Shown: positions 18,013 to 43,304 of the stretch, one piece after another
Numbering within the stretch: position 1 is the first letter of the stretch
Layout of the letters: each line of letters opens with the position of its first letter
From: Asterias rubens
Lineage: Eukaryota
NCBI RefSeq assembly: GCF_902459465.1
Contig: NC_047067.1
Location: 21,452,001 to 21,516,000, forward strand
Direction: 5' to 3'
DNA: 64,000 nt
Program-made: the position numbers and the translations under genes
Notes under the pieces: model-generated
What the model was told of the DNA's origin: nothing
What the model saw: only the letters and a program-made list of their open reading frames with translations
The model's database searches: none

Positions 18013-21000
18013 ATGTCGACAGCGGCTGTTACAAGAGGACAGTCGGAGTATATTCAACCCTCTACTGCCACACAGGTAAGAAAATGTAACACATTGAACC
18101 AATTTTTCTGTCATTTTGACTAGATATGTTTGAGTCGTAGGTTTGGCCTAGTTGACTTCGTTCATAACTTCCGCAACGCTTTATTCACACCCACATGTAA
18201 AGCCCGCCCCTTGATCCATCCCGTAGATTTATTGAACAACACAAAAACAGAAATGTTGCTCTCGTCACCTCTTTGCAGGGAGACAATAGTGGCCAACAGC
18301 AGCCATCACCTCTGGCGTTGCTTGCAGCAACTTGTAGTAAGATTGGATCACCGCCTGAGGAAGCCGTGAATACTGCAACGACCACAGCCGTCCGGTTTGT
18401 TGGGCAGAATCAGGGCTTCCAAGCGGCAGATACACAAATAGGGTTTGTGGGCGCCAACGGCGTTATAACCGCCATTCCTCATGTATCTGCACAACAACAA
18501 CAACAACAACAGACACAATTCCAGACCATCTCTGCTTTTCCCGTTCAGATTGCCGCTGCCACTCCTCAGTTACAGCAACAACAGCAGCAGCTCATCGAGA
18601 CAAACAACACCAGTAAACAATCAGGTACGAATAATGGAACCAATATACTGAACTGGAACCCACAGGTGCAGCAGCACCAAATTATACAGCCATCCCAGCT
18701 TTTGACAGCTGCACCTACAAATGCAGCCAACTCGGGTGGTGCATCAGGCAATACAGTTCAGTACAACATTATTCCACAGCTTCAGCTAGATGCAGATGGT
18801 AACATTATCGCAACTCAGCTAGCGAATGCCATCAACCAATCGCCAACCATCATCCGACCAACTGCTGCATCAAACAACTTCACAGGCCTAGCATTGCAAA
18901 ATGGGCAAATTATACAGACGCAAAACAGCAATATCATGCAAAATATTGCTACACCACCGAGGGTGGCCAGTCAGCCCCTTACATTCCAACTGGCTCCGGT
19001 GGCTAGCTCAGGGGGTAATATGAACGACCAGCAACAGCAGGTTTACAGCATAGTTGCAGCAGCTCCAATGCAGCAAGATTTCACCAATGTAGTGCAGATC
19101 CAACCTCAGCAGTTTCAACAGCAACAGCAGCAGCAGCAGATAGTTGCAGCAGAGCCGCAGCAGTTGCAAGTAGTTCCCCATCAGCAGCAACAGCAAATTG
19201 TGCTTCAACCGCAGCAAGCCAATTCGATACCAGTCGGCATCAGCATGGCTCCTCAGCAAGTTCAGGTACAGTTGAATTTTTGCATATCATCAAAGAAAAG
19301 GTATCTCTATGGTACAGCTTTGAAGTCTACTCAATTAAAACATGTTAGCCTGTTAAATTAGAAAAAGGACTTTGCTGTATAAAAAGGTACAGCAAATTTA
19401 TCTTGTTTCTACCGTTGTTGAAAGTCAAGTAAAAATCCTTCAATCGTAGCAAATATTATTTTGAAAGAATTTGTCCATATCACAAGGGAAGTGGTTCAGT
19501 GATTTGTGTCGTAGCACATTTCAGTCATAAGCCATGAAATTATAGTTTTGAGCATGTTTTCCTTCTTTTTTAACCATTGACAATTTTTGTTCAAGTTAAA
19601 TTTAAAACCACTTGTACTTTTGTTTTGACTTTCAAAGCAGTCACTGTACCTAATAATATTTCTCACTCATCATTTTTATTGTGGTAGATTCAGCAGCCTC
19701 AACAGAACTCGGGAACCACAGTTACTATTCAACAACAGCAACCACAACAGATAAACATCCAGGCTCGCCCACAACAGCAACAACAGCAGCAGCCTCAGCA
19801 ACAGCAGCAAAGCTTCACTGTGCAGCCTGTTCAGCAGGCATATGCAATCCAACAAGGACAACCACTGCCGGTCATTAATGCCTCTACCTCAGGGCAACAG
19901 ACCATTACAATCCCTGCCCAGACAGTCACTGGTCAACAGGGTTTCCAGAACTTCATCTTACAACCACAGAACCTAAATGCAGTTCAAACAATCCAATTGC
20001 CCGGCCAGCAACAGACGGCGACCATCTTGCCTGGCTCTATCTTTACGACCCTCCGTTCTCCTAATAACACCATCAACCTTCAAGGGTTACAGATACAGGG
20101 GATCAGCATGGCTGGTACAACGTCCCAGCCTCAACAAACTTTAACATCTACGGCAGGGATGGGGAATACTGGTTCCGTTGCTGGAACACAAACTGTCACA
20201 GCCTTACCCAATTTCAGTTTATCAACGGGGAATTTGGTTTCTATGGGAATGCAGCTACAGCAGATAAGTAAACCGGGAGCAGGAAACAACACAAGATCCA
20301 CTACAGTCACAGGTAGGTTTGAAAAAGCTATTTGACTCATCGTCGATGTTTCAATGTCCAGGTTGTTACTTTACTCTACCTGCTCTTAAGTAGGATGTTT
20401 AAACTTTGAGGTTTTCAGTAGCACCATGTGTAAATCTCTTTTAAGTAGTGTTGGTTTTAAAAAGAACTGGTGTTTCTAATGACTTTTTCATTCTGCTACT
20501 GCAAACTTCACAATTAAAAGCGCATTGTTTGGCATAATGTATCTTCCACAACTGCAGTGGATGGTATTGAACTGCTAGACACTGACAGTAAAGTGCTGCA
20601 ATACCTTTTGGATGTTGTGGCTTCTTATTAGTTGGTAGTTGATTAGCAGCTTGTGGGTGGGGCCAGCTGTCAAATGGGCATTCAATCAACCCTTATTGAG
20701 TCGCTCACCTCCATTCACTCCCTCTGACTAATTTGCTTGTCTCCACTTTTCTCCTGTCCAACTTATTTTGTTAAAATTTGGCCAATACAATTTAATGAAG
20801 GCTCACTTATTGTGTTAAAATAAAACAAAAATTGGAATAGTCTTCCCAAGATTTCCACATTCCTAAGAAAAGGCTTTGCATCATCTTTATTTAGATATAA
20901 CATGCAGCGAGTAACGAAAATACAGAACAAACTTATTTTGATGCAGAATATATTTTTGGGTGAGCACTCAATTATAATTTCACTCAGGCTCTTGTATAAA

Positions 21001-23371
21001 CTCTCTTTTTAAGTTGTCTGGTATCTACTTTGATAAGGTCTCCCCCAAACCAAACAAAATCAAGATAAAGGGTATTTCAGGTCAAGAAGTTAGATTTGGT
21101 GGCCATCAATCATCCTTTCATACCAATAAGACATTCCTTTAGGCTTTGCCTCAGACTGTTGACCTTTGTACTCCCTAAAGGTGTGTGTTACTTAACCTCA
21201 TATGCATTATCGACATTGTACCGAGGCATTACTTTATAATACTCTTACATGTGGACAGCAACATCAAGAGAAATGGAAGACAATAAGAGTATAGCATTTG
21301 GAATTATTTAAATTCTCCAATCTTGTAAAATAAAATGTAAAAAACAAGATTGTCATTTCACTTCCAGACATACCTTAAAATTCATGACATTTAACAAAAA
21401 AATAAGTTGTTGAGGAGAACACAATTTTTCAGAGGAAATATGTTTTCTAACAGAATACTCATTTGTTACTATTCTTTGTGTCTCGTGTCTCTTTTAGTTG
21501 CACAGCAGCAGCCTGGTACTCTTCAGGATAAGAAGTGGCAAGGGCAAACACAGGTTATTAATCCGGTGCAGACTAATACATCCATTAGTCTGGACAATCA
21601 GTTTGTAGGGTCAGATGAGGAAGAGAACCAGGGACAACAGAACCAGGTGCCTAAGCGGCTCAGGAGAGTGGCATGTACATGTCCCAACTGCAAGGACAGT
21701 GAAGGAAGGTAGGTGCATGTAGAATATAAAAAGAGCCTGTCGGTACTACAGGCTTGGAATAACATGAAGGCCATGTATGGCCCCTGTTGCCCCTGGACGT
21801 TGCCTTGGTGCCAAAACAATTTCACATACACTAGACTTTTGATTTCGCAATTGAAAAACTTTTAAAGTGGCACCAAGGCCAACACCAGGACAACAGAGGT
21901 CATGACCGCAGTAGCCTTTGTGTAAATTCCAGACCAACAACCTTCTTGTCTTCCTTTAGTATAAATACAGCTTGAACTTTGAATATACAACTTTAGGTTT
22001 GACAATAAATCTTTATTCAGCCACTTACTTCATCCTTCATAAGTTTTAGTGAAAATGATGCTTTAGATCTGGACCAAATTTCATGGTTCTTCTTCTTTCA
22101 GAATTCTGTGCTAATGGCTCAAAAATCTACATGCTTAACAGCCCACCGAAGGTACAGAACTCCGCAGTAATTAAAGCCATGAATTAGGATCCAGACCTGC
22201 ATGCAATTTTCGTTTCTGAAAGACTTTTTTTGCTCACCAAAATAGGAATCTGAATGCAGAGGGTCGCAAAAAACAACACATTTGCCACATGCCAGATTGT
22301 GGCAAAGTGTACGGCAAAACATCCCACCTTCGAGCTCATTTACGATGGCACACAGGGGAGCGGCCATTTGTCTGTAACTGGTTGTTCTGTGGTAAGAGAT
22401 TTACAAGGTCAGATGAGCTACAGCGACATCGGCGGACTCATACAGGTAGGGTATTAGTGACATTTCTTAATTTTTGATGTAAATAATCCAAATAATCCAA
22501 TATTCCAAAAATCTGCGCCTTGAACACCCAGCAGAGTGGATATGTGCGCATTATAAGTCTTATTATTATTATTATTATTATTATTAAAGGTATCACAATG
22601 TACGACACTGTATATTATGACCAATATGGGTATGTGGGAACCCCCTTCCCTCAATGTTCCAATATTTTAACACACTGTTTGCCTCTTGTACGGAAGTACC
22701 CCCCCCCCCTTCCCTAAAATTCTCTGAAAGAATTTCTGTGATTCCAAGCCCACATTTGAAAACACAGTAAGCCCCATGTTTGAGCTGATGAAGAAGAATT
22801 TTACAAAAAGCACTGATCATATACTAGTTATATCAACTGCGCAAAATCCACCCCAGCTTTACAAAGTTGTAAACGTGTAAAATTGATGTAAATATAAAAG
22901 TTCAAGCATTTAACAATTAGCAATGTAGGATTTTGACTGGTGTAAACTAGTCACAGGCATGCATGCTTCGTTAATATGGAAATTTCTACTGGAGCATTCC
23001 AAGGGCACCAAGGCAATGGCCAGGGGGCACAGAGGCAATCGCCTTCGTTGCCTCTGTGAAGTATCAGGCCTGTAGTCATCTTCAGGATAACTAATACATT
23101 CTCAACAATTATATTGAATTTCCCAGGAGAGAAGAGGTTTTCCTGTCCGGCTTGCTCAAAGCGCTTCATGAGAAGTGACCACCTCTCCAAACACATCAAG
23201 ACTCACTCCAATAAGAAAGCCAACCCAAGGGATGATGAGTTTAGTGACGGTACAGTGACACTGGAAATGGATGGAAGTGAAGTGATGGCCACTCCAGACC
23301 AAGAGGCCTTGACCAATGCTGTGGTCATACGGATGGGTACACAGGCTCTGGACAGAATGGAAGCCAGCTAG
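18013..23371 (+). CDS. Sp1-4: Sp1-4-clade (Sp1/2/3/4-like) transcription factor, 776 aa. Exons 18013-18075, 18279-19265, 19688-20312, 21498-21708, 22246-22445, 23127-23371.
   Basis: It has an Sp2-like N-terminus [21 protein letters not shown], the Sp box [14 protein letters not shown], long Q-rich domains and the btd box [12 protein letters not shown]. Three canonical fingers carry KTSHLRA / RSDELQR / RSDHLSK. All GT-AG junctions are phase-compatible (2331 nt). Confidence 0.96.
22555..22586. repeat. (ATT)n microsatellite in an Sp1-4 intron
   Basis: A ttattattattatt run is visible in the sequence. Confidence 0.85.
22954..23072. mobile_element. Dispersed short repeat family (gggcaccaaggcaa core, caggcctg ends); relatives at about 21770-21935, 39072-39195, 40510-40630, 40995-41070 and 59570-59620
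   Basis: The ggcaccaaggc(a/c)a motif and caggcctg-like boundaries are shared across these intronic and intergenic copies. Confidence 0.55.
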
Positions 23372-26660: not shown

Positions 26661-26925
26661 ATGGCGCCACCACTTTTTCACTCATTTTTACAAAAAGGTA
26701 TATCTCATTGAGGTAAATTAGATACTATAGTATATGGATAACTTTCCGTATGGCGCCACCACTTTTTTACAAAAAGGGATATCTCATTGACTCTGACTCT
26801 GAGGTAAATTAGATACTATATTATTTCATATCGAATGAAAAAGTGGTGGCGCCGTACGGAAACTTTTCCTACTATATTATTTCATTTTGAGTGAAAAAGT
26901 GGTGGCGCCATACGGAAACTTTTCC
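26661..26925. repeat. Nested foldback (inverted plus direct repeat) element, MITE-like
   Basis: There is a perfect 24-bp inverted repeat atggcgccaccactttttcactca (26661-26684) / tgagtgaaaaagtggtggcgccat (26888-26911). An inner inverted repeat lies at about 26746-26767 / 26838-26859, and the internal blocks are duplicated. Confidence 0.8.
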
Positions 26926-27334
26926 TTATTTATAAATTAGTCCCACTAAATGTACGGATGCGTTCGACTACCAGTAGTAGCATTGACCTCCTGTGATTTC
27001 TTCCTCTTTGTAGATGGTCTATCTTACAATAATTAATATTACAAAATGTTGGGGGGGGGGGGGGTTCCAGCCTTGTCAGCTGTCTGCTGAATCATTCATG
27101 AATTGAATTGAATTGAATGTCTTTAAAATTTTATTAACAAAAACTAAATTATAAAGAATAACAATTTAATTTACAATCTTGTTCCAGAAATGATTTCTAC
27201 TTTATTAAAAAGTTTTATTTGATTAAAGGAAACACTACACTTGTTTGTAAGTTTGTTGACGTCAGGGTTATTTAAAATCCAAGGCCTGAAAAATGACTCA
27301 CTCCTTTATTCTCAGATTGAGTTTTTCATACATC

Positions 27335-30300
27335 ATGCAAGCTTTGATTGATGTCAAACCTGATGAGAAGCCAAAACTCTTCTGCATCTGCAAGACACCA
27401 GATGACGGAGGGTAGGAATTTATTTTCTTAGATTAGAAGGGCCTCTGTAGAATTGTACAAGGCAGTATATGCAATTTCTTCTGATGTACTTTATGTGTTA
27501 TTCTCATGGAGCGTTCTACCTGAACAGTTTTCCTCTGTTCAAATGCTAGTTAAAACACCTGAGGACCAGTCAAAATTATCTCTAAGTGGTCTGGCTGGCT
27601 TGAATGTAAAGTGATTGTAGAAAGGCATCAATATTTAGAATGGATTAGGACTAGTAAAGAAGATGGTAGACAAGTAAAATGACAAGCTTACTGTTTCCGC
27701 AAAGGGTAAACACTGAAATAGTTAAGGGCAAACTCTGTCATGGAATCTATTTTAATTATTTATTATTTTGCAACCACAGGCGCTACAAATAATTTATTGT
27801 AGATATCGCATGTGTCTTGAGTAAATACCTTTCCTCCTTTTAGGATAGATTTCCTTGACTGTTTAGGACATTTAACCTTTAGAGAATATTTTTGTTGATC
27901 ACTTGATCTAATAGATAGACACAATGTGAGATGCCATGTAAAAGTTCCATTATGTTTGCACATATAGAAATGCAAAATAGTTAGACCAATATTTTTTTAT
28001 TAGTCATGTGGAATATGATAATAACATTCACTGTCGGAATGATTGATAAGTTATCACAATTGAGCATTGTACATAATGGCCGTATTATGTGACACTCTTT
28101 CAGGTTCTACTTAGGGTGTGACAGCTGCCAAGGATGGTTTCATCCAGTCTGTGTGGGTGTGGCCCAACAGGATGCCAAAAAAGACGGAGCATGGCACTGC
28201 CACGCCTGCACATCTAGGATTGCAGGTGACCCTGCAAACAAAGGTAACAACAAACAGGGTGTGAAACAACCAGGCAGGCTACTCGTGTGGGATTCAAACC
28301 CAAAACCTTTGCCATTCCAGAGAAGATGACGAACAACTGGACAACCTCATTCTTTAATCATTTATTACCTTGACAATCATTCCCCCTTGTGTGGGGTTGA
28401 CCAAAAAAAAACTAAAGGTTAACTTACTTTGAGAAAGTTTGTGTATGGTTAACAACACGTCTTGAATAGAACCCCGGACCACTCGGCCACCAATGCTCTA
28501 CTATTTCTTTCTATACTTTCTGCTTTTTCTTTCATGAGAGGCTTGTTAACACTCGCTGCACAGGGGCCTAGTTTGGCAGAGCTGCTAAGTAGATTGTGTT
28601 ACTGTGCACATTATTGCTAAGCAATCACTAACAAGGGAACAGTCTTGTGCACATCTTCACATAGCATTGCTCTGATAGTGACCTGTTTCTGTATAGCACA
28701 CATTTTCTCCTGTGTGCTGTAAGCAGCTCTACAAAATAAGCCGCTGTGGTTTCTCTCAAACTCTTAGCGCACATTTACACCCTGTCGGTATTGTGCCCTG
28801 ACTCCACATCGCTTAATTTTCCTTTCAGCTGCAAATGAGCACCATTGGCCTACTGGTCCCTTCATTATACCAGTCTCTGAGATGCCAAACGAAAACCCTA
28901 AATCCCCTGAAATTCCCGACCTTGCAGTTGACATACCCAGCCTTGCTGACGAGCTCGCCGACCTGCAGAACCCTCAACCTCAGCAGCAGCAGCAGCAGCT
29001 CCACAGCCAGGGGATGATGACCGGTGTCGCCCAAGGGACCGCTGATTGCCAAGGAGGAGCGTCTACTCGGACAACAATGGCGGAGGTTAACAACGAAGGG
29101 ATGTCCATGAGACCTAGACGGGAACGATGTTGCTGCCCTTACTGTGAAGAAGACAGAAAAAAGTAAAAACTCTTCTTCTTTTTTCAAGTTTGTGTTTTTT
29201 TTTTTCAAGTTTGATTTTTTCTTTCTTATTTTGTTTAAGTATTTGGTTTTGGGTATTTTTGGCATTCTATTTAGCAAACATAGTAGGCATGTAAATTTTG
29301 TCCAGACACGCCTTCAAGCAGTTTTAAAAGCTGTGCAAATTTCCATTTGTGTTAGTTGTTGGCAACCCGGCAAAGGGTTACATATATGTAACATTTTCTG
29401 ATTGGGCAGTTGGAAAGCTTCAACTTGCCGACCAGCTAAGAAAAGCTGTCTGCCATAATGAAAACCAGGCTCACTGGGTAGACCACTCAACATTTTCAAG
29501 ATTTTTGTTCTACGAATACAACTTTGAAGAAACAGCTCTTTTAAAAAAACACTTGCAGTCTTGTTCCTAAATAACATACACCATACTGATTGATTGACTC
29601 TTTAGGAGTGGCATCACCCTAGGGGTCAGAGGTCACATTTGCCACATCCAAGCCTGCAGTCGCGTGTTTGCGAAGTCAACAGAGCTCAAGGCTCACTCAA
29701 GGATTCACACCGGTCAACAGCAAAATGTCTGCGACTGGCCGGAGTGTGGAAGCAGTTTCTGGCGATCTGATGAACTCCTGCGACACTACAGGACTCATAC
29801 AGGTAAGGTGTTCCGGAAATGATTTTAATTTGAAGTTTTGGTTTTGTTGAAAAAAAAGTTTAAAATGCCTGTAAATGATACACGTGTTACATTTGTTGTT
29901 GCTGCTACCACTTTATCAATTCTGATTAATAACCCTTTTTCCCCCAGAAGTTTTTACAGAAAATAATCTTGCTAGTACAATCACTGTCAATTATTACCTT
30001 TTTGGAAAGAACTTTTTTATTACTTGAGCCCAAATAATTCTTTCTGTTTGGGGTTTGAAATTCACAGCCAGACGCCGCAAAGCTAAAACCACGCCCAGTA
30101 AAGTGGTTGGGGAATTGCCGCACATCTGCGACTGGCCATTGTGTGGGCGGGGCTTCAAGCGGGCTGACAAACTCCAACGACACTACCGGACGCACACAGG
30201 TACAAATATCACAAACAAATTATCATTAGATAAACCTCCCTACTCTCATGATCAAGTTATTTGGGGCTTGACAAAGTTAAGGTGTCACTAATTCCATACC

Positions 30301-32984
30301 TTTTTGACCTGTGCATGTTGAAATAGTGGAGTTTGTCAGCCCATTCATTTAGAGATCATCTTTGGTAAAATTAAAAAATGTTTAGTGAATTGAGAACATT
30401 TGTAACTTTTTTCCTTTCTTCACAGCTTCTTAACTTCATGATCCTATAGAAAGAAACTGGCACAATTTAAGATGAGAATATATTTTTGTTGAAAAGTTTC
30501 TTTTTTTTCTTGTCTACTGGGAACCAGGAGAGAGGAAGTACCAGTGTACACAATGTCTGAAGCGGTTCCTGCGTAGCGACCATCTGTCCAAACACGTCAA
30601 GACGCACGATAACAAGAAGACTAGAGGTCGACGGAAGCAGACTGGTCCAGCGAGTGCAGATCAGAACATGATTGTGGACAACGTGGTGCCCATAGCTGGG
30701 GGAGGAACATCCAATACTGGTAAGGAAAGGAAGAGAAGCGTTTTAATTGTGAAATACATTTGATTTTGAAATTGATGTTTATGTCTTATCAAGATTTTAT
30801 ATATACTTGTGGATATAAACTTTGTATTATCCCATTGAGATGTACATATCTTGTTGATGCCTGTTGGTACACTATTGATATCTTATTGATAATTGGTTGA
30901 TATTTGTTGACATAATTAATATCTTGTTGAAATTGTTATAATGATCTTGTTGAAATTGTTTATTTCTTTGTGATATCTTGTTGGTATTTTATTGATAAGT
31001 GGTTGATTTCTTGATGACATCGTATTGTGTTCTTACTTTCATAATATCTTGTTTATTTCTTGTTGATATCTTGTTGATGCTTGTTGACAAAATGATATCT
31101 TGTTGGTATGTGTTGATTTCTTGTTGATACGCTTAAAATGTGTAGATATTTTGTGTAGATGCATTTACATTGATGATATAATTTTTGGTTATATATCTTG
31201 CTTATTGACTGATTTACCTCAGGAAGTGTAAAAGTCCAGATTTCACTGTGTGATTATATTCTGCGGAAATGTACTATTATACATCCAACATTTGTATAAT
31301 AATAAACGGCTGTTTTTATATATCACATTCTACTGATATGTTTTTTTATAACCTACTGAAGTATTTATATTTTATTATATTATGTTGCCAATTCAATTTG
31401 ATGAGACTTGTTGTTGTTATTTGTTGTTGTTGTTTATCAGTTGGTTATAATCAAGCTCCCATTGAAGGATCGGAAGAAGAGTCTAAAAAACAAGCAGCTG
31501 CCCAGAAGAGAATACAAAGACAGCCCTGTAGCTGCCCCAACTGCGTGATGGACACCAACAGGTAAGATGGTATACCCAACATACAGTTGGTGAAAGATAT
31601 TTTATGTCATTCAATTCTACTCAATTATTTAAATTTTTATTTTACAGTTGTTGGTATCATTATAAAATGTTGCTAAAGATTTTGTGTGTACAATTTCAGA
31701 CACGAATGACAACAATTTTTTGGGGCCACGACTAATGGTATCTTTGCTTATCATTATTTGTGTAAAAAAAGCATCTCTGGTACTTGCGTTGCTTTAGAAA
31801 TGTGTTATTGGGACATACACTTATTATAATAATTTATTCCTAATAAAATCATCTACAACCTCATCAATTTCCTACTAATCATCAAAATTCTGTTTTTACT
31901 TTGTGGAGTTGTTGCACTTAATATTTGCATCTTTTGTGTTGACAGATTGAAATTATGTTAACTTCCAACATTAGTTTCATCCAAACATTATCTCTTTCTG
32001 AATTTGTTTTCATTCCAATAAATGAGAATAAAGTTACAGCATTGTTTGAGTTAGTGCCCTTTATTCAGAGATACTTTTTGTAGACTCTGAGTTAATGGAG
32101 TTTGTGTGAAGTAACATTTGCCTGATTTCCCCTTTACAGGCAACCGGGTGAACCAAGTCCCTTTGGTCCTAAGAAGCATTTATGCCACATTGAAGGCTGT
32201 GGTAAGGCCTTCGCTAAGACGTCCCACCTTAAGGCTCATATCAGGGGTCATACCGGGGAGAAACCTTACATCTGCTCATGGATGGGATGTCAAAAATGCT
32301 TCACAAGGTCAGATGAACTACAGAGACACTCCAGGACTCATACAGGTAAACAATAAAACCAAATCAGCAATTAATAAATACATCGTTTGGTTATTATCCA
32401 CTACTAAAATTGGGTCAGTTTGAATCTGAAACCTGATAATAAATAGTTCTTCCTAAAATACTGTCAAAGTTAACCACAAAGCAGATGAAGATTTTGACCC
32501 CCCTCCCCCTTAAAAAACATTCCCCCCCCCCCCTGCAATTAAGTAAAACCTGACATTATCTAACAAAATCTTTTACTAAACACTCTTTGTTGTTTTCACT
32601 AAAAGATGAGAAATGAAGTTATCTAAGGTTGGTTTTATTTGATTGTTGAATCCTTATTCAGGGGAGAAACGCTTCTCATGTCCAGAGTGCCCGATGAGCT
32701 TCATGCGCAGCGATCATCTCTCAAAACACGTCCGGACGCACGACAACAAGAAGACCCGCGTACAGACGCAAGGGGAACGAGGTGAGAAGCGCCATCAATG
32801 TCCAGATTGCCCCAAGCGTTTTTGGCGAAAGGACCACCTAAAGAAGCACGCTAATACTCACCCAAACCCACAGGGTAACACTCCTAATCTCAGTAGTATC
32901 CAAGCGACGCTGCAGATCATTAATCAACCTCAGTCTGCACCCATGTCGGAAAGTTTGCCTCCGTTGGCCTCAACCTCTTCTTGA
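27335..32984 (+). CDS. Sp-derived chimeric factor: PHD finger + Q-rich + btd box + 4 C2H2 fingers + btd box + 4 C2H2 fingers, 573 aa. Exons 27335-27411, 28104-28243, 28829-29162, 29606-29802, 30068-30199, 30528-30719, 31441-31561, 32140-32345, 32662-32984.
   Basis: The PHD reads [12 protein letters not shown]|[19 protein letters not shown]...WHCHAC. The btd boxes are [12 protein letters not shown] and [13 protein letters not shown], and there are eight Sp-type fingers. All eight introns are GT-AG with compatible phases, giving 1722 nt without an internal stop. Splicing of the two modules into one mRNA is inferred, not proven. Confidence 0.85.
30846..31130. repeat. Degenerate satellite with a unit of about 11 bp (gatatcttgtt)n in the intron between the two Sp modules
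   Basis: Repeated atatcttgttga / atttcttgttga variants. Confidence 0.75.
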
Positions 32985-35916: not shown

Positions 35917-38329
35917 CACTTTTGTTTTTTTGTAGGTGTTTTTGTTTTTTGCACACAATTTAGGAAATTTAATGAAGATAAACAAATGTACATTCTTGCA
36001 ATCGACTGTTTTTATTTGTTAGTACTATATAATATTGTAGTTATGTACAATGAGCCAAGAAATTGTGTATACATCTAGGCTTGACATCGGGTACCAGTGT
36101 CATAGCTTTGTTTACTGCGCAACACTGTAGAATATTACAGAATACTGCAGAATCTACTGCAGAATCACGACTCAATGAGCCATAAGCGCAGATAGATCTC
36201 TGCAGTAACCAGAACCATGACAATGAAGCCTGGTCATTAAGATTTTTTAAATGACAAGGGGAACATTATGGGGACCAGTTACAATGTACCCATTTTTGCC
36301 ATGTACGCAACCAGTTTAATGTCATTTTCCAATTGTGTACTTTATATCCAAAGGCACCCTTGTTGGTTTTGTGCACATAATTTACTTCTGATTATTCTCG
36401 GTTTGCCAAACCACATGAATCCCTTTTTTAAAGAATCGTTGATATCAACTCCAGACATGCTTATAAACATATGCTCATAATTGTGAACCATATTTTGTAA
36501 GCTTTATAGCAATGCTTAGCTGGCATCTTCTTGTTATATTTGTTCATGGAACTTAAAGCAGTCCACTGTGAATACAATGGCTTGAGCCATAAGCCAGCCA
36601 TTCCATGCAGGATATCACATTGTTGCAGATGGTAGAAAATGGTGCCTAGATATGACTATATTCACTAACGAGTTTGTACAAGTTTTTAGATTTCAATTTA
36701 TAGACGTGCTGGCTACAATTTGCACTCACAATATATACTCTGAAAACTACAACGCCCGAACCCAAATTTACACTGTATTAAGTTATCAATGGTGAATTTC
36801 CTTTGCCAATTAGGAATCCTAGAGAGTGCCTAGCTTCAACTGGATTATTGAAGATTGTATTTACCCATTAAACGTCGTGGTGCTAGTTACAAGAAGAAAT
36901 TAAATCCTAAACATGTCTTTATTTTGTACAGAACACATAAGAAATTATTATGACAATATACTAGACATGAACTTAATCAGTAGGACAATGCGTGTCTCTA
37001 TGTATTATTGTGTACATGTACATGTATATAATTATAATCATTATAATTGTCTGTCCCAAGTCATACAACTTGAAGCTTTGAAGTGTGCTAAGGTTGCCAC
37101 CATTTAGTTGAACATAGGCTATTTTCCAAACCTGGGCTAAATTTCATAAAGCTGTTAAGCAAATGACTCTGCTAAGCAAATATCTTGGCTAAGCAAGAAA
37201 TGACTAGGGTACCAGTTGCAGCAATGGCAATTGTTAGTATTCTGGTTGGTAAGCTATTTCTGATAAGCAAAAGTTGTCTGTGCTTACAGGCTTTAGATCT
37301 GGCACCATTCACCTTTTTGAAGTCACTGGTAAGAAAGTATAGGTTTTCAAAATGAGTGCAAAGGCTAAGAAATGATAGCGTTAATATAGTTGACTTTGGT
37401 CAAATCTAAAAGCTACAAAGCATAGATGCTTAAGCATTTTATTTATATGGCTTGGTTAAGACCAGTACCGGTAGTTGGGAAAACAGTTAGCTGCACTACA
37501 AGTCTGTAATTACTCCTATTATTCAACAGTTTTTATTGAAAAGTTTGTGTTTTTAATCATGAAAATATGTAATGTAAATTAAGAAACAACGGAATCTCAC
37601 TTCATCCTCAGATTGAATTTGACGGAAACAGAAACCAATTTACTTGATAAATAACTTGTGATTAAATTTGTTGTTTGGGGTTTCATGATGAAGCAAGGGT
37701 CTACTCTAGGGTCAGACGAATTCAGGAATATTCACCAACCTCAATATATTTGCTTTATATAGAAAGTGTACACATAAGATATTAAAAATGTAAAATACAA
37801 CACTGATGAATTTGATCCATTTTAAGGTTTGATTCTGAGACAACTTTCATTAAATACAGTGTAACATTGGGGTTTGGTTAAATTAACTCCCGTTTATAAA
37901 CACTTTGCCAACTTCCATACTAACCATCTTTCTCTGGATTTCCGTAGGTGACATGGTGTCAACAAGGAGGGAGTCTGGATGATTTCTTAACAGCTTATTT
38001 TTACTGTTGTTATTCAATTATGGAATGGCATGGCCGAGTGGACTTGTGCACCAGACAGTTTCAGTGTTGTGTGGGTTTGGGTCCGAAGTGGCACTTATAT
38101 CCTGGAGTTTGTATATACATTGTAACTGTATTGTTCTTCATATGGGACATAAAGCAGCAGGTCTTGTGTGTTGTGTAGCACACTTAGAACCAAACGGCAC
38201 ACTTATTGCTAAGTGGAGGGGTTTGCCAGGTGTCTATGGCATGGTTGGCTGCAGACTGCACCATATCTCCTTGTAAACCTTGATTATGTTACCATGGCGA
38301 AAGTCTTCTTGCTTGACTTGTTGAAATGC

Positions 38330-41300
38330 TCAGAATTCTTTTTTGATATCTGTGGAGGAAAGAAAACATGCTTGATTTATTGACAACTGCAAATACAAGT
38401 CCCTTCACTATTAGCTCAATATGCAGTTGTGTACATCAGCTTTGCGGATGACTATTTCTTGCTACTGTAGCTGATCATTTCAGAACTTTGTTAAGTGGCA
38501 TGAGAATGAATTGCCATTTATGAATCACATCTTGAGTCAACCTACTATCATTATTGTACCCTTCTTTCTGCTCTTCCGAGATGGTGAGCATTTGGACTCA
38601 TTATTTACTACTCAGGGAGCCATTCAATGACAATGAGTCAGTCGATTAATCTGGGTTTGTTCTTGTGAGTCACAATAACTCAAATAGTTATTTGCGGAGT
38701 AGAATCTGGAGTCACTCGTCATACACACGAGATAAAATACTCACCACTTTGCTCAATTAATTTGCCCTTCCGTGTGCCTTCCAAGCCGGTGACAAATTGC
38801 TCAAATACTTGGATGCTCTTCAATAAACTCGTCTTCTTATAATCTGATTAGTGAAAACAAGAAAACATAAACTTATCACTTTGTGGATTGTAGTCCAATG
38901 TCATAATGTTGGTCTTAGTTGGTGTGTGCAAAAGAAGTTAGGAGTATTGTTTCTCACGGTATAAAACAGTACCAGACTATATCCTCTTCCAACCAGATTT
39001 TGATTATTTGAATATTCATGAAAGAGGTCACCAAAGTGGGTCATGTTGGACAATAATTACTTGCATACTCCAGGCCTGTAAGCTTCGTTTTTGAAAGGGC
39101 AAGGAACCCAAGGCATTTTCTCCTTATAAAGGGGCAACCTATAAGGAAGTTGTCAACTTCTACTGGGGCATTTTAAGGGCAACAAGGCAATGATACTCCC
39201 ATCTCAATGATACTCGCATCTCTCTGTAAACTTGACAATGGATCAAAAGCTTCTGGTTTCAGTTAATTCAGATGAATCTAGCGTATTATTCAAGCCTCAA
39301 CATTTACCTTCAGACTTGTAACTCTCTTGCCTTCCAGTCTCATTTTACTTCTTGAATAAAAAAGGTAAAACACAACTTAGAGGTTTTTCTTCTTCAAGTC
39401 TTACCAGGGAAACCTTCATGTACCTACCCTTAATCCTCTTCTTTGATGGAGGCTCATTTTCATCATTTGTAGCTTTTTGTTTTCTGTCAAACTCATCAAT
39501 TTCCCTGCACAGCTGGCTGAATCATTGAAAATAAAAGAAAGTTTTTCCTAAATTAAAACAGGCGGCCAACTTTGGCGATTGTCAAAAACCACTTAACATC
39601 ACCAACATAACATAAAACGAAAATCAGAGTCACAAGAAAATACAATCTTCAAATTTGGGACTTACAAGATCAAAAAAAAGTTGATCATAAACTATAGTAT
39701 TTCAGGCCAAAATATTTCAAGGAAACTTTTCCACCACAACCCTCTTCGTACCATGTTAGTTATGTTTAAACTGTAACAACTTTTGTATCTTGTGAATATT
39801 GAGTACACCCTTTAAGAATCATTGGAAGTAGAGTTGTGATTTGTAAAGTTTCGACCATGCTCGAAAAGCTTACACACTAACACAAAGTAGGTTTGAGTTT
39901 TAATTCTTAAACACACTGGCAAAAATCCTAGGCTACATTACACCTTTGCACATCAGGTCTGGGTCTACTACATTGGAAGTAGAGGGCAGAGAGGAAAGAA
40001 ATATCTTCACCTAATATCAGGGACAGTGAATGGATCAAAATTGTCCACATCTTTGGCGTCGAATGCAACACAGACTCTGCCCGTTTTCGGATGGACACAG
40101 AATGGACTCTTGAGTAAATGGTTGATTCCTTTACTGACGTTGACGTCCAAACGAGGGTAACAATACTGGAACTTGATCTCTGTTACAAGGTGCTGGCACT
40201 TCTTGACATTTCCCTAAGACAAGGAAATATGGAAAAAGTTATCATGGCTGTTTTCCGAGGTTCAAGAGATATGACAAATAATTGGTAGTTTGAAATTGCT
40301 TATTCTGGCTTTGAGATGGCTTACTTTGCTGACTTCCCCCATAATGCATCTCTCTAAACGATCCCATCTCTCGGCTGATGTTTTGGCGCGCTCCATCTGC
40401 TCTGCAAGTAGTTTCCTAAGATGTGAGGGCACTATATAGTCAAGGAAGAGCTTTGCAATTAATAGAACACTTCTTTGTTTATTTGGATTCTTTCTTGAAA
40501 GAACATGTCTGGAATTTCATCTTTGAGAGGACAGCGATATTTTTATTTTACAAAAGGCACTTCCAAAGGAAAATCTATGAGAAACTTTAGAAAGGGCACC
40601 AAGGCCAAGACCAGGGCATTGGAAACCATGTGGTGAACCAGATTTTCTGAAAGACTTATGAAAACAATGAATCTTAAAGATACTTTTTTTTTTCTTCTCA
40701 AGAGCTTTGTGTTTAAAGGATATTAGAATCATTGACAAGGGTCAAGACTTTCTCCCACGATGCTTTGTCTTCCATCAGACCCTGGTTCCGCAGAGCATAT
40801 CCCTCAAAATAGTGATTGATGATTCGTTTGGCTTGCCTGAAGAAGGTAAAAAGAAGAAACGACATAATTGGATTAATGTATTAAACTGAAGTGTGTGAAG
40901 CCTGCTCAATGCTTAATTTATCTGAGCACTTCAACCAATAGCAACACATACTAAACGTGTGGACCATATTTTATATCACTGATGCGCCTTAGCAGGCCTG
41001 GAATTTCATCTTTGAAAGGGCAAGGCCATTGGAAACTTTTGAAGAGGCACCAAGGCAAAGACCAGTCCATCGCCTATGTGTAACTCCAGCATGTGCCTGT
41101 CAAACAAATAACTATGAATGGCTTGGCTGCAAAATGGATTTCTTGGCAATCTTATTGTATGGGGACTGTTTTATTATCACTACTTACTCGATGGAAGGAT
41201 GTAGATGCTCTGGAAGACTCACTTTCTTGACTTGGTTCTCACCCCCCTGTTTAGTAAAAAAATATTTGAGATAAAGCCTGAAATGTTTGGTTCGAGACAC

Positions 41301-43304
41301 ACATTTGAAGGTTTAAAAATGCACTGTCATATTCAATCCCCACCCCCTCCTGTCAATACACAAGTCTTACCTTCACAACACTCAAGTATTCTGCAATTGC
41401 TGAGCGTGCATTCTGGGATAGTTTCCTGGCGGCCTCATCAGCGACCCAACAATGAACTCCTCTCCGGCCAGAATAAACCCACATGCGATGATCGAACCCA
41501 AAATCATCTTAAATACAAAAGAGACATAGAATTTAAATTATAATTTCGACTGATTTAAGTAAATATCAGGCAAGCAACTGCAGCTTGTCTTAAATTGCCA
41601 GGCACAGCGAGACAGTGAATGAATCAGCTAAAACATTGCATATGGATAGTGTATGTGTCTGTGTCTTGCTTTCCTGTATAAAAATAAATTGATAACAATA
41701 ATCGTATAAGACTTGGAGGAATTCCTATGCATCTTTGTTATTCTATATTTTTGCACCGTCAGCAGAAAACATCGGTCACACAAAACTTTCACAAGGGTTT
41801 CCCTTCTTTTTCTGAAAAACTTGGCAATCAGCTGATAGGATTCACAAGTTTGGTAATTGGTATTCACCATTGACAGTACAAAGGGACACAGGAAGCTATT
41901 TACAATCCTTCCCCCTTTCTGGTTGTGAAGTTTAGAGAAGAATAAATGAAAGTTGTGAATACCATGAAGTGCTCGATCAACGATGCGGACTGCAATTCTC
42001 ATAAGCGGCCAGCACTTTTCACAAATATCAGCTCCCCTAAAAGATGGAAGAGAAAAACATATAGAATTTTTATTTTCAAATGTAATTACTCCATTCTTTG
42101 GATGAAAATTTAGCCGTTTACTCAGGAAATACTGCCTTGACTTTACGAGATCGAAGTATCAGGCCTCTGTAAGTAGTAACCATGCCCATTGCCCCATAAC
42201 ACTACTACATGGTATAATAATTTCTGGGTTGAAATGCTTCCTCTATAACTTACTGACAGCACACCCTGACATCATCGTAGTCTGTCATATCGATATCAAA
42301 TACAAGTTCCTTCTCTTGAGCTTGAAAAGATGCTGCTTTCACTGTCCTGTGATCCTTCGGCTGAAATATAAACAAAATATAAATAATCAAAGAACATTTC
42401 TGCAATTCCCCCCTAATGAAAATAAATCTTTCTTTGTGGAAAGTCTTAATTTGTTTTGAAGGCAATCTAGCTATCATTGATGGGGTTGAAAGTGAGGGGC
42501 ATCTACGACAGTTTGCATTTTAAGGTCGATTAAATTCCTAAATGTCATTGGTGTTGCTTACTTACCCGGTGAGTGAAGACTGCGCCGATATCAATCTTGT
42601 AAGGACATCTTTTCTGTATTTCTTTCTCCATCTCACTCTGATCGGCAAACGACTGGTAGCGAATGTAGATATCATCTTTTAGCGTGAATGAGAACTCACG
42701 ATTCTGGAAGTACGTCTTAGGCACTAAAAAATGAAATAAATCATCTGCAGTTAAGAATCATTCATGGACAATTATGTCATTGAACATTTGGTACTCTCGG
42801 ATGTACCTGTGTCTGTTTGGTATGTACTGTTGTTTAACTTATTGACAAAAGAAACATGAACCATGTGAATTGTTTTATACACTAGTGACTACACAGTCAT
42901 GACAATTTCTGGTTTTATTTTAAATTACACACAACACAAGTAACTTAAATTAACTATCAAGCTAAGAACAAGAACTGAAGCTAATAGTAATATAAAAGTC
43001 AGTACAAGCACCGACAAAAACTAGCTAAATTAATGATAGGACAAGGTTGATCACAATGTTTACAAAATAATGAAGTTTTTATTTATTAATAATTTCATCT
43101 TCCCAATGCCAATCAATCAATGCAATAATGGCCAATCAATCCAATATTAGTTGACATTGTTCGCTTACGTCCGCCGTAGTTGAGCCAACGGTAGTACTGA
43201 TTATAAGGAAATAGACGTCTGTAGTACAAAGGCAATAATTCCGGCAGCTCATCCTGAGAATATGTAGATTTTGTTGTTGTTTCTGAATGATCGTTGAGCG
43301 CCAT
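38330..43304 (-). CDS. PRIM1: DNA primase small (catalytic) subunit, 430 aa. Exons 43169-43304, 42566-42723, 42254-42360, 41963-42036, 41371-41507, 41188-41246, 40724-40836, 40325-40422, 40011-40213, 39428-39516, 38745-38843, 38330-38349.
   Basis: The translation includes [99 protein letters not shown] and DYKKTSL. The CDS totals 1293 nt in frame. Confidence 0.97.
40423..40723 (-). other. U12-type (minor spliceosome) AT-AC intron in PRIM1
   Basis: The 5' end is ATATCCTTT, the branch site is TTCCTTGAC (40439-40447 on the reverse strand), and the intron ends in AC about 16 nt downstream. Only this boundary keeps the primase reading frame. Confidence 0.92.

What the first reader, a model, noticed from the sequence alone, without database searches (positions are those of the whole stretch)
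27335..32984. Previously unrecognised PHD-finger / double-module Sp transcription factor with 8 zinc fingers
Seen in sequence: 4 kb downstream of the canonical Sp1-4 stop, nine GT-AG-bounded, phase-compatible exons give a 573-aa ORF. The order is PHD finger, short Q-rich stretch, btd box A ([10 protein letters not shown]), ZF1, ZF2, extra ZF2', ZF3, btd box B (RQPCSCPNC), ZF1, ZF2, ZF3, extra ZF3'. There is no Sp box. Intron positions in both modules copy the neighbouring Sp1-4 gene (phase 2 just after the btd box, phase 1 at HT-G). Both ZF3 copies end in HDNKKTR versus HSNKKAN in the parent, so the module was duplicated after diverging from it. Established: Sp/KLF proteins have one triple-finger array, and Sp proteins have one btd box. 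Inference: this is a lineage-specific gene made by tandem duplication plus exon shuffling. It may couple histone-mark reading to GC-box binding.
Basis: partly seen in the sequence, partly recalled or inferred. Interest (0 to 1): 0.95.

Follow-up and report, generated by a model that had tools for sequence, protein, structure and literature searches.

The report
Sea-star PHD plus double-Sp zinc-finger gene
This is a real, conserved sea-star gene that joins a histone-tail-reading PHD finger to two copies of the Sp1-type DNA-binding module; genome databases already hold it under a generic name, but I found no paper describing it as an unusual Sp-family member.

Summary
Nine GT-AG exons (27335-32984, + strand) give a 573-aa ORF, 100% identical to Asterias rubens RefSeq XP_033628745.1 ("zinc finger protein 436-like isoform X1"). 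So the gene model is not new. Its Sp-family nature appears unreported in four literature searches.

- **Conservation:** Orthologues with the same nine exons, the same phases and the same neighbours (Sp1-4 upstream, DNA primase downstream) exist in A. amurensis, Acanthaster planci and Patiria miniata.
- **Selection:** dN/dS is 0.05-0.11.
- **Distribution:** Nothing with this N-terminus was found outside sea stars.
- **Architecture:** BPTF-type PHD finger, then Btd box + 3 fingers, then Btd box + 3 fingers + 1 extra. The eighth finger (ZF2') is a cassette exon skipped in annotated isoforms of all three genera. Skipping it restores a canonical 81-aa Sp/KLF domain in module A.
- **DNA contacts:** Module B keeps every base-contact residue of canonical Sp proteins.
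- **Origin:** Both modules share the two intron positions and phases of the neighbouring Sp1-4 gene.

Coupling GC-box binding to H3K4-methyl reading is plausible but untested. Verdict: a new variant of a known kind, of moderate interest.

The parts
27335..27411 (+). Coding exon 1: start codon and first half of the PHD finger (PHD begins at nt 27383, C17-x-C19). The donor is phase 2.
28104..28243 (+). Coding exon 2: second half of the PHD finger (to nt 28209). It carries cage residues Y28 and W37 and zinc ligands C31, C34, H39, C42, C58 and C61.
28829..29162 (+). Coding exon 3: conserved WPTGPF(I/M)IPV motif, acidic/Q-rich linker, and Btd box A (CCCPYC, nt 29128-29145). An alternative acceptor at 28928 gives isoform X2, which lacks 33 aa.
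29606..29802 (+). Coding exon 4: fingers A1 and A2 of module A. It ends at HT|G, phase 1.
30068..30199 (+). Coding exon 5: symmetric phase 1-1 cassette exon. It encodes a long basic linker plus the extra finger A2' (contact residues RDKR). It is skipped in isoform X3 (529 aa).
30528..30719 (+). Coding exon 6: finger A3 and the first part of the inter-module linker.
31441..31561 (+). Coding exon 7: rest of the inter-module linker and Btd box B (CSCPNC, nt 31527-31544). The donor is phase 2, in the 6th codon after the last Btd cysteine.
32140..32345 (+). Coding exon 8: fingers B1 and B2 (contact residues KSHA and RDER, as in canonical Sp). It ends at HT|G, phase 1.
32662..32984 (+). Coding exon 9: finger B3 (RDHK), extra finger B3' (RDHK), C-terminal tail and stop codon.
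18273..23371 (+). Neighbouring canonical Sp1-4 gene, coding part seen here. It has an Sp box at 18306, Q-rich exons, a Btd-box exon ending at 21708, a ZF1-2 exon at 22246-22445, and a ZF3 exon from 23127 to the stop at 23371. It is the likely parent of the Sp modules.

Best explanation
**Shown**
- This is one real protein-coding gene of the sea star Asterias rubens. It is already modelled in RefSeq (XP_033628745.1) under a generic name.
- It is conserved with identical exon-phase structure and gene neighbours in four sea stars from two orders.
- It is under strong purifying selection.
- It was not detectable outside Asteroidea.
- It is a divergent extra member of the Sp branch of the Sp/KLF family. 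It has two complete Btd-box + triple-C2H2 modules, each carrying the two introns of the adjacent Sp1-4 gene.
- It has two extra fingers made by internal duplication: cassette exon ZF2', and ZF3' inside the last exon.
- Its N-terminal PHD finger is most similar to the H3K4me3-reading PHD next to the bromodomain of BPTF/NURF301.

**Inferred**
- **Origin:** the gene arose in the sea-star stem lineage by tandem duplication of an Sp1-4-type gene, then intragenic duplication of the btd/ZF exon block, then capture of BPTF-like PHD exons.
- **Module B:** it has exactly the Sp base-contact residues (KSHA/RDER/RDHK) plus a fourth RDHK finger, so it should bind GC/GT boxes extended by one G-rich triplet.
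- **Module A:** this is a second, more diverged DNA reader whose geometry is switched by splicing. Skipping exon 5 gives a canonical 81-aa three-finger domain. Including it gives a split 2+2 arrangement with a long basic linker, and an RDKR finger replaces the RDER finger next to A3.
- **PHD finger:** it keeps three of the four BPTF cage positions (F16, Y28, W37) and has Asp in place of BPTF Tyr17. It should therefore tether the protein to H3K4-methylated promoter nucleosomes, possibly preferring me2.
- **Overall role:** with no Sp box and no conserved Q-rich activation domain, it more likely acts as a chromatin-anchored occupier or bridge of GC-box promoters than as an Sp1-like activator.
For: - **Gene model:** exact ORF and splice sites. 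Identity to the RefSeq model, with isoforms listed.
- **Orthologues:** 8-finger and 7-finger isoforms in Acanthaster and Patiria.
- **Conserved structure:** nine exons with start phases 0,2,1,2,1,1,1,2,1 in all four species. Exon-length differences between species are multiples of 3.
- **Selection:** dN/dS is 0.053 (A. rubens vs A. amurensis; 15 synonymous and 3 non-synonymous differences), 0.087 (Acanthaster vs Patiria) and 0.109. By domain (Acanthaster vs Patiria): PHD 0.047, module B 0.030, inter-module linker 0.27.
- **Synteny:** Sp1-4 upstream and DNA primase small subunit downstream in all species.
- **Family motifs:** Btd box twice and the strict KLF-DBD pattern once or twice depending on isoform (using the definitions in PMC4558859).
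- **Introns:** positions and phases shared with Sp1-4. A shrimp Sp5-type locus encodes the end of its Btd box through ZF3 with no intron; an assembly gap hides the start of that Btd box.
- **Tree:** modules A and B group together at 90/90.
- **DNA contacts:** contact residues read from the finger sequences printed. The script's own index was off by one, so I re-read them by hand.
- **PHD finger:** best PDB match is the BPTF PHD (E 1e-14). Eight of the ten nearest PHD relatives have two PHD fingers plus a bromodomain. BPTF Y17E prefers Kme2 over Kme3 (PMC4589357).
- **Distribution:** the N-terminal 192 aa finds only the asteroid cluster in 5.8 billion clustered proteins and in 1.84 billion cluster representatives. 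None of the other 149 listed hits has a C2H2 finger or a Btd box.
Against: - No transcript evidence could be reached here. The linkage of PHD, module A and module B rests on RefSeq models and on conservation of frame.
- No binding data exist for either the PHD finger or the fingers.
- The AlphaFold model was poor (mean pLDDT 47.7; PHD below 40), so the cage geometry is untested.
- Finger A1 contact residues differ between genera (KTEA, KSHL, TSKQ), and the A1-A2 linker is non-canonical. Module A may therefore bind DNA weakly or differently.
- Phylogenetic placement within the Sp family is unresolved with the few references obtainable.
- A+B sisterhood could be long-branch attraction.
- I could not check whether sea stars keep separate Sp5 and Sp6-9 genes.
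Confidence: 0.75

Rival explanations
1. The two modules are the sea-star orthologues of Sp5/btd and Sp6-9. These are the two genes expected next to Sp1-4 in the ancestral three-gene Sp cluster. On this view they fused into one transcription unit and picked up PHD exons, rather than forming an extra gene made from an Sp1-4 copy.
For: - An ancestral Sp1-4 / Sp5 / Sp6-9 cluster is documented (PMC3087555).
- No other Sp-like fingers lie in the 31 kb downstream or the 17 kb upstream of this window.
- Both modules have SHLKAH in finger 1, as do the fly Sp6-9 sequence and the shrimp Sp5-like sequence. The fly Btd sequence has SHLKTH, and Sp1-4 has SHLRAH.
- AU tests do not reject A+flyBtd (p 0.14) or B+flySp6-9 (p 0.12).
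Against: - Both modules carry the post-Btd phase-2 intron and the HT|G phase-1 intron of Sp1-4. The one Sp5-type locus I could read has neither intron.
- The ML tree puts A and B together at 90/90, apart from fly Btd and fly Sp6-9.
- A and B share derived traits: F[AS]K in place of YGK, loss of the Trp in HLRWH, and CPNCVL[DE] after both Btd boxes in Patiria.
- Neither module has an Sp box, nor the ATCDCPNCQEAERLG signature seen in the fly Sp6-9 sequence.
Confidence: 0.15
2. The 573-aa protein is an annotation chimera. Two or three adjacent genes (a PHD gene, Sp-like gene A and Sp-like gene B) are transcribed separately and were merged by the reader and by Gnomon.
For: - Chimeric double-Sp models do exist in databases. 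P0079 joins fly Btd to fly Sp6-9. P0160 (Intoshia) joins two tandem Sp genes by cutting through ZF3 of the first.
- No spliced transcript could be retrieved here. The only extra database ORFs (P0126, P0243) are unspliced genomic reads.
Against: - All fingers are intact.
- Exon 6 and exon 7 keep phase 1 in four species, although their lengths differ by 9 and 21 nt, always multiples of 3.
- The inter-module linker is under constraint (dN/dS 0.27 where dS is 1.07).
- Exon 7 has no Met upstream of Btd box B in any species.
- Independent annotations of four genomes give the same joins and the same alternative isoforms.
Confidence: 0.06
3. It is a decaying or neutrally evolving tandem duplicate of Sp1-4 with no function of its own.
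For: - It sits 4 kb downstream of its probable parent gene.
- Finger A1 contact residues and the linkers are variable.
Against: - The ORF is intact in four species whose synonymous sites are saturated (dS 1.3 to above 2).
- dN/dS is 0.05-0.11 overall and 0.03 in module B.
- All eight PHD zinc ligands and all finger ligands are invariant.
Confidence: 0.02

Closest known systems
Sp1-4 class of Sp/KLF transcription factors (the neighbouring gene in this window; human SP1-SP4)
   Same: - A Btd box (C-x-C-P-x-C) lies 17-20 residues before an 81-aa C2H2 triple finger.
- Module B has identical base-contact residues.
- There is an NKK motif after ZF3.
- The two intron positions and phases are the same.
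- The two genes are adjacent on the same strand.
   Different: - It has two modules instead of one.
- It has 7-8 fingers instead of 3.
- It has no Sp box.
- It has no conserved Q-rich or S/T-rich activation regions.
- It has an N-terminal PHD finger.
- One finger is splice-switched.
- It is restricted to sea stars.
BPTF / NURF301 C-terminal PHD finger (H3K4me3 reader; PDB 2FUI, 2F6J)
   Same: - It is the best sequence match (E 1e-14).
- The C4HC3 zinc ligands are present.
- The [11 protein letters not shown] core is nearly identical to some BPTF-like PHD fingers.
- Cage positions equivalent to Y10, Y23 and W32 are kept as F16, Y28 and W37.
   Different: - The Tyr17 wall is replaced by Asp, with a loop one residue shorter. 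This resembles the engineered BPTF Y17E (PDB 2RI7), which prefers Kme2.
- No bromodomain follows.
- The PHD finger is single rather than double.
DPF/Requiem (BAF45) proteins and other PHD + C2H2 combinations
   Same: They combine a Kruppel-type C2H2 finger with histone-reading PHD fingers in one polypeptide. This comparison is from my own knowledge and was not tested here.
   Different: DPF proteins have one C2H2 finger and a tandem PHD that reads acylated H3K14. They have no Btd box and no Sp-type triple finger, and they are not related by descent.
Database "double-Sp" models (P0079 fly Btd+Sp6-9; P0160 Intoshia linei)
   Same: Both have two Btd + finger modules in one predicted protein.
   Different: Both look like annotation fusions of tandem genes. 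The Intoshia model truncates ZF3 of the first gene. Neither has a PHD finger, and no cross-species conservation of the join was seen.

Membership tests
Sp subfamily of KLF/SP (definition in PMC4558859) | 81-aa KLF-DBD: C-X4-C-X12-H-X3-H-X7-C-X4-C-X12-H-X3-H-X7-C-X2-C-X12-H-X3-H | tested here: met
   The regex matches module B in every isoform. It matches module A as well in the cassette-skipped isoforms of all four species.
Sp subfamily of KLF/SP (definition in PMC4558859) | Btd box C-X-C-P-X-C just N-terminal of the DBD | tested here: met
   There are two Btd boxes (aa 173 and 387), 17 and 20 residues before the first finger cysteine. The reference Sp proteins have 18-22 residues. Conserved in four species.
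Sp subfamily of KLF/SP (definition in PMC4558859) | SP box S/T-P-L-X-phi-L-X3-C-X-R/K-phi near the N-terminus (described as "generally" present) | tested here: not met
   No match in any isoform or species. The same regex finds [13 protein letters not shown] in the upstream Sp1-4 gene.
Sp subfamily of KLF/SP (definition in PMC4558859) | Only three zinc fingers (the pipeline criterion of that survey) | tested here: not met
   There are 7 or 8 fingers depending on isoform. This criterion would have filtered the gene out of that family survey.
Sp1-4 class specifically | Q-rich and S/T-rich activation regions; phylogenetic placement with Sp1-4 | tested here: inconclusive
   Only a short Q run is present in Asterias, and it is not conserved in Acanthaster or Patiria. 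The tree does not resolve placement. Shared introns and adjacency favour an Sp1-4 origin.
H3K4me3-reading PHD fingers (BPTF type) | C4HC3 zinc ligands and PHD fold | tested here: met
   Pfam PHD hit at E 3e-8. BPTF PHD match at E 1e-14. All eight ligands are invariant. The fold itself is not confirmed, because the AlphaFold model has pLDDT below 40 in this region.
H3K4me3-reading PHD fingers (BPTF type) | Four-residue aromatic cage (BPTF Y10, Y17, Y23, W32) | tested here: inconclusive
   Three of the four positions are aromatic (F16, Y28, W37). The Y17 position is Asp23, whereas 98 of 143 nearest homologues have Tyr there.
H3K4me3-reading PHD fingers (BPTF type) | Binding of methylated H3K4 peptide | not testable with these tools
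   This needs a peptide binding assay.

The most novel reading that the evidence does not exclude
Sea stars evolved a family-breaking Sp factor in which a natural "Y17D" BPTF-type PHD finger reads H3K4me2/3. Two Sp-type DNA-binding modules then bind, and perhaps bridge, two GC/GT boxes. A conserved cassette exon switches module A between a canonical three-finger array and a split four-finger array with a different central triplet preference. This would be a splice-tunable chromatin-plus-sequence reader with no counterpart in other animals.
Probability: 0.3. Interest if true: 0.7.

Novelty: new variant of a known kind. Interest (0 to 1): 0.5.

Why it matters
Sp/KLF proteins are defined by a single C-terminal triple finger. 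At least one family survey explicitly discarded anything with more than three fingers (PMC4558859).

This gene shows that the Sp module can be duplicated within a gene, extended, made splice-switchable and fused to a histone reader. It has also stayed under strong constraint across sea-star orders whose synonymous sites are saturated (dS 1.3 to above 2).

It offers two things:
- a natural test of how reading a histone mark and reading a GC box cooperate at promoters;
- a clean example of new regulatory-gene birth next to its parent inside a conserved syntenic block (OLA1 - Sp1-4 - this gene - PRIM1).

It also means sea-star gene-regulatory-network studies may be missing a fourth Sp-type factor.

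Tried and rejected
- **Module B search for a phylogeny set:** flooded by poly-zinc-finger proteins. Only a few usable Sp/KLF references came out, so the tree is thin.
- **Alignment supplement of Schaeper et al. 2010:** the stored PDF text is visibly corrupted, with many rows identical. I did not use it for sequences.
- **Looking up the shorter isoforms in the contig index:** this failed because only the longest product per gene is indexed. The X1 isoforms worked.
- **AlphaFold on the 4-sequence alignment:** pLDDT was below 40 for the PHD finger and linkers. I did no fold search and made no structural claim about the cage.
- **PDB sequence search with the cassette-skipped isoform:** it ranks WT1, KLF5 and KLF4 among the three- to four-finger proteins. 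No three-finger Sp1 chain appeared among the listed matches, so this says nothing about Sp versus KLF membership.
- **My first finger-contact script:** position -1 was indexed one residue off, and one Patiria finger was mis-anchored. I re-read the residues by hand from the printed fingers.
- **Recent gene conversion as the cause of the shared HDNKKTR tails in Asterias:** rejected. The Arg codons differ (AGA versus CGC), and Acanthaster and Patiria do not share the tail.
- **Pseudogene reading:** rejected.
- **Four literature searches for any description of the gene:** nothing found.

Full report
**1. The observation**

Nine + strand exons, with GT-AG at every internal boundary, join into a 1722-nt CDS that translates to an open 573-aa protein. 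The exons are 27335-27411, 28104-28243, 28829-29162, 29606-29802, 30068-30199, 30528-30719, 31441-31561, 32140-32345 and 32662-32984.

Pfam finds a PHD finger at aa 17-61 and multiple C2H2 fingers. A regex scan finds eight fingers and two C-x-C-P-x-C Btd boxes, at aa 173 and 387, and no Sp box. The upstream gene is a canonical Sp1-4. It has an Sp box ([13 protein letters not shown] at nt 18306), Q-rich exons, a Btd box ([10 protein letters not shown]), three canonical fingers, and a stop at 23371. The description and coordinates are therefore correct.

**2. What it is**

A search of 5.8 billion clustered proteins returned three strong hits, all from sea stars: Asterias, Acanthaster planci and Patiria miniata. 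All three carry PHD plus C2H2 domains.

Cluster look-up shows that the window's protein is 100% identical to XP_033628745.1, "zinc finger protein 436-like isoform X1 [Asterias rubens]". So the window is A. rubens, and the gene model already exists in RefSeq. Two more isoforms are annotated:
- X2 (540 aa) uses an internal acceptor at 28928 and drops 33 residues.
- X3 (529 aa) skips exon 5, the ZF2' exon.

Acanthaster and Patiria each have a 603-aa isoform with ZF2' and a 550-554-aa isoform without it. The eight-finger form and the cassette skipping are therefore annotated in all three genera, which span the orders Forcipulatida and Valvatida.

**3. Is it one real gene?**

I fetched the three orthologous loci. 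Using an exact spliced mapper, I reproduced each annotated protein from nine GT-AG exons. The start phases are identical in all four species: 0,2,1,2,1,1,1,2,1. Exon lengths differ between species only by multiples of three.

Nei-Gojobori dN/dS values are:
- 0.053 for A. rubens vs A. amurensis (15 synonymous and 3 non-synonymous differences);
- 0.087 for Acanthaster vs Patiria (dS 1.33);
- about 0.1 for Asterias vs the Valvatida, where dS is saturated.

By domain (Acanthaster vs Patiria), dN/dS is 0.047 for the PHD finger, 0.030 for module B, 0.114 for ZF2', and 0.27 for the inter-module linker.

Exon 7 has no methionine before Btd box B. The exon 6-7 join keeps its frame in every species. Together this argues against both a pseudogene and a chimera of separately translated genes.

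I could not reach transcript data. The only extra database ORFs, P0126 and P0243, are unspliced genomic reads. Database chimeras of tandem Sp genes do exist. P0079 joins fly Btd and fly Sp6-9. P0160 of Intoshia cuts through a finger to join two tandem genes. The sea-star gene differs from these in having all fingers intact and in its four-species conservation.

**4. Synteny**

In all four species the gene lies between an Sp1-4 gene on the same strand upstream and the DNA primase small subunit on the opposite strand downstream. The A. amurensis locus is collinear with the window at 91-98% identity. Further upstream, the window carries OLA1 exons (PDB 2OHF, E 1e-17).

**5. Family assignment**

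I used the published definitions from PMC4558859. The strict 81-aa KLF-DBD pattern is met by module B in every isoform. It is met by module A only when exon 5 is skipped. Both Btd boxes sit 17-20 residues before the first finger, against 18-22 in reference Sp proteins. The Sp box is absent. That paper's pipeline kept only proteins with exactly three fingers, which would have excluded this gene.

Both modules share two introns with the neighbouring Sp1-4 gene: a phase-2 intron in the sixth codon after the last Btd cysteine, and a phase-1 intron at HT|G. In a shrimp Sp5-type locus, the end of the Btd box through ZF3 lies in one uninterrupted ORF (an assembly gap hides the start of that Btd box). 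This matches my recollection, not tested beyond this one locus, that Sp5-9 genes encode the domain in one exon.

An ML tree of Btd + three fingers groups module A (99/99) with module B (84/85) at 90/90, apart from sea-star Sp1-4, fly Btd and fly Sp6-9. Trees that break A+B are 5-9 log-likelihood units worse, at AU p 0.035-0.14, which is suggestive but not decisive.

A and B share derived traits: F[AS]K in place of YGK in finger 1, loss of the Trp in HLRWH, and CPNCVL[DE] after both Btd boxes in Patiria.

Finger-by-finger identities show that A2' is a ZF2-type duplicate (66% to both A2 and Sp1-4 ZF2). B3' is a ZF3-type duplicate (66% to A3 and to Sp1-4 ZF3, 61% to B3).

**6. The PHD finger**

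The best solved relative is the BPTF PHD finger (E 1e-14), followed by CXXC1/Spp1, PHF2/8, DIDO1 and TAF3, all H3K4me3 readers.

A full HMMER scan of 1.84 billion cluster representatives with the N-terminal 192 aa found only the asteroid cluster below 1e-30. Apart from one unspliced genomic ORF from a close Asterias relative (P0243), the other listed hits match the PHD region only. None of them has a C2H2 finger, a Btd box or the WPTGPF motif. Eight of the ten best are 2xPHD + bromodomain proteins, the BPTF/NURF301 architecture, and the matching PHD finger is the one next to the bromodomain.

Of BPTF's cage residues Y10, Y17, Y23 and W32, the sea-star protein keeps F16, Y28 and W37. It has Asp23 at the Y17 position, in a loop one residue shorter. 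This is invariant in three genera, while 98 of 143 nearest homologues have Tyr there. BPTF Y17E is reported to prefer Kme2 over Kme3 (PMC4589357).

**7. How it probably works (inference)**

- **Module B.** It has exactly the Sp contact residues at positions -1, 2, 3 and 6 (KSHA, RDER, RDHK) plus a fourth RDHK finger, in all species. By the standard finger recognition code it should bind a GC/GT box extended by a G-rich triplet.
- **Module A.** It keeps RDER and RDHK in A2 and A3, but A1 varies between genera (KTEA, KSHL, TSKQ).
- **The exon 5 switch.** Including exon 5 inserts a long basic linker and an RDKR finger directly before A3. Splicing therefore toggles module A between a canonical triple finger and a split 2+2 array with a different central triplet.
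- **The PHD finger.** It should anchor the protein on H3K4-methylated nucleosomes, which mark the same promoters where GC boxes are common.
- **Overall role.** No Sp box or conserved Q-rich activation region is present. I favour a chromatin-anchored occupier or bridging role over Sp1-like activation.

None of this was testable here. The AlphaFold model was too poor for the PHD finger (mean pLDDT 47.7; fingers 60-80).

**8. Distribution and novelty**

The architecture was seen in all four annotated sea stars and nowhere else. Four literature searches found no description of the gene. Published work describes three Sp genes in the sea urchin S. purpuratus (PMC3087555).

It is therefore a new variant of a known kind. 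It is an annotated but uncharacterised, asteroid-restricted Sp derivative with a doubled DNA-binding module, a splice-switched finger and a histone-reader domain.

The main open point about its origin is whether the modules descend from an Sp1-4 copy (favoured) or from fused Sp5 and Sp6-9 orthologues. Locating, or failing to locate, canonical Sp5 and Sp6-9 in sea-star genomes would settle this.

Noticed in passing
window 10177-13113 (+): These are exons of an Obg-like ATPase 1 (OLA1) gene directly upstream of Sp1-4 (PDB 2OHF, E 1e-17). From memory, human OLA1 lies between SP3 and SP9 at 2q31. If so, this would be very old OLA1-Sp microsynteny.
   Followed up: partly
window ~38320-42850 (-): The DNA primase small subunit gene (Pfam PF01896 in the A. 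amurensis, Acanthaster and Patiria loci) lies downstream on the opposite strand. It is placed in the window only by collinearity with L003.
   Followed up: partly
window 30945-31129 (intron 6): A degenerate 11/22-nt minisatellite (ATATCTTGTTG, about 8 copies, 61-70% matches) lies inside the intron that separates the two Sp modules.
   Followed up: no
window 26814-26926 and 27047-27065: A 56-bp tandem duplicate (2 copies, 92% identical) and a G run of about 16 bases lie 270-520 nt upstream of the start codon, in the presumed promoter or 5' region.
   Followed up: no
window 30068-30199 (exon 5) and orthologous exons in L001/L002: The cassette exon ZF2' has a much lower synonymous divergence between Acanthaster and Patiria (dS 0.48) than the gene as a whole (1.33). 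This would be expected if splicing-regulatory sequence constrains silent sites.
   Followed up: no
L005 3001-9805 (Intoshia linei, P0160) and P0079: Two database proteins with two Btd + finger modules look like annotation fusions of tandem Sp genes. The Intoshia model truncates ZF3 of the first gene although the genome encodes it intact. P0079 joins fly Btd to fly Sp6-9.
   Followed up: partly
L004 6001-7865 (Penaeus vannamei, P0197): The shrimp "putative Sp5" model spans a 100-N gap and what look like two partial tandem Sp5-like copies. The second copy encodes the end of its Btd box through ZF3 in one intronless ORF.
   Followed up: partly
P0188, P0241 (Rhinatrema bivittatum): Two caecilian proteins combine an Sp1-4-type Btd box + triple finger (ACTCPYC..., THQNKK) with extra fingers. 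In P0188 there is also a KRAB domain hit (PF01352). This may be another lineage-specific rearrangement of an Sp module, or a model fusion.
   Followed up: no
P0127/P0128 C-termini (L001, L002): The Acanthaster and Patiria orthologues end in a conserved VPDPNLLQNLDLTPK tail that Asterias lacks. All orthologues share a WPTGPF(I/M)IPV motif after the PHD finger, and Asterias isoform X2 removes it. The function of both is unknown.
   Followed up: no
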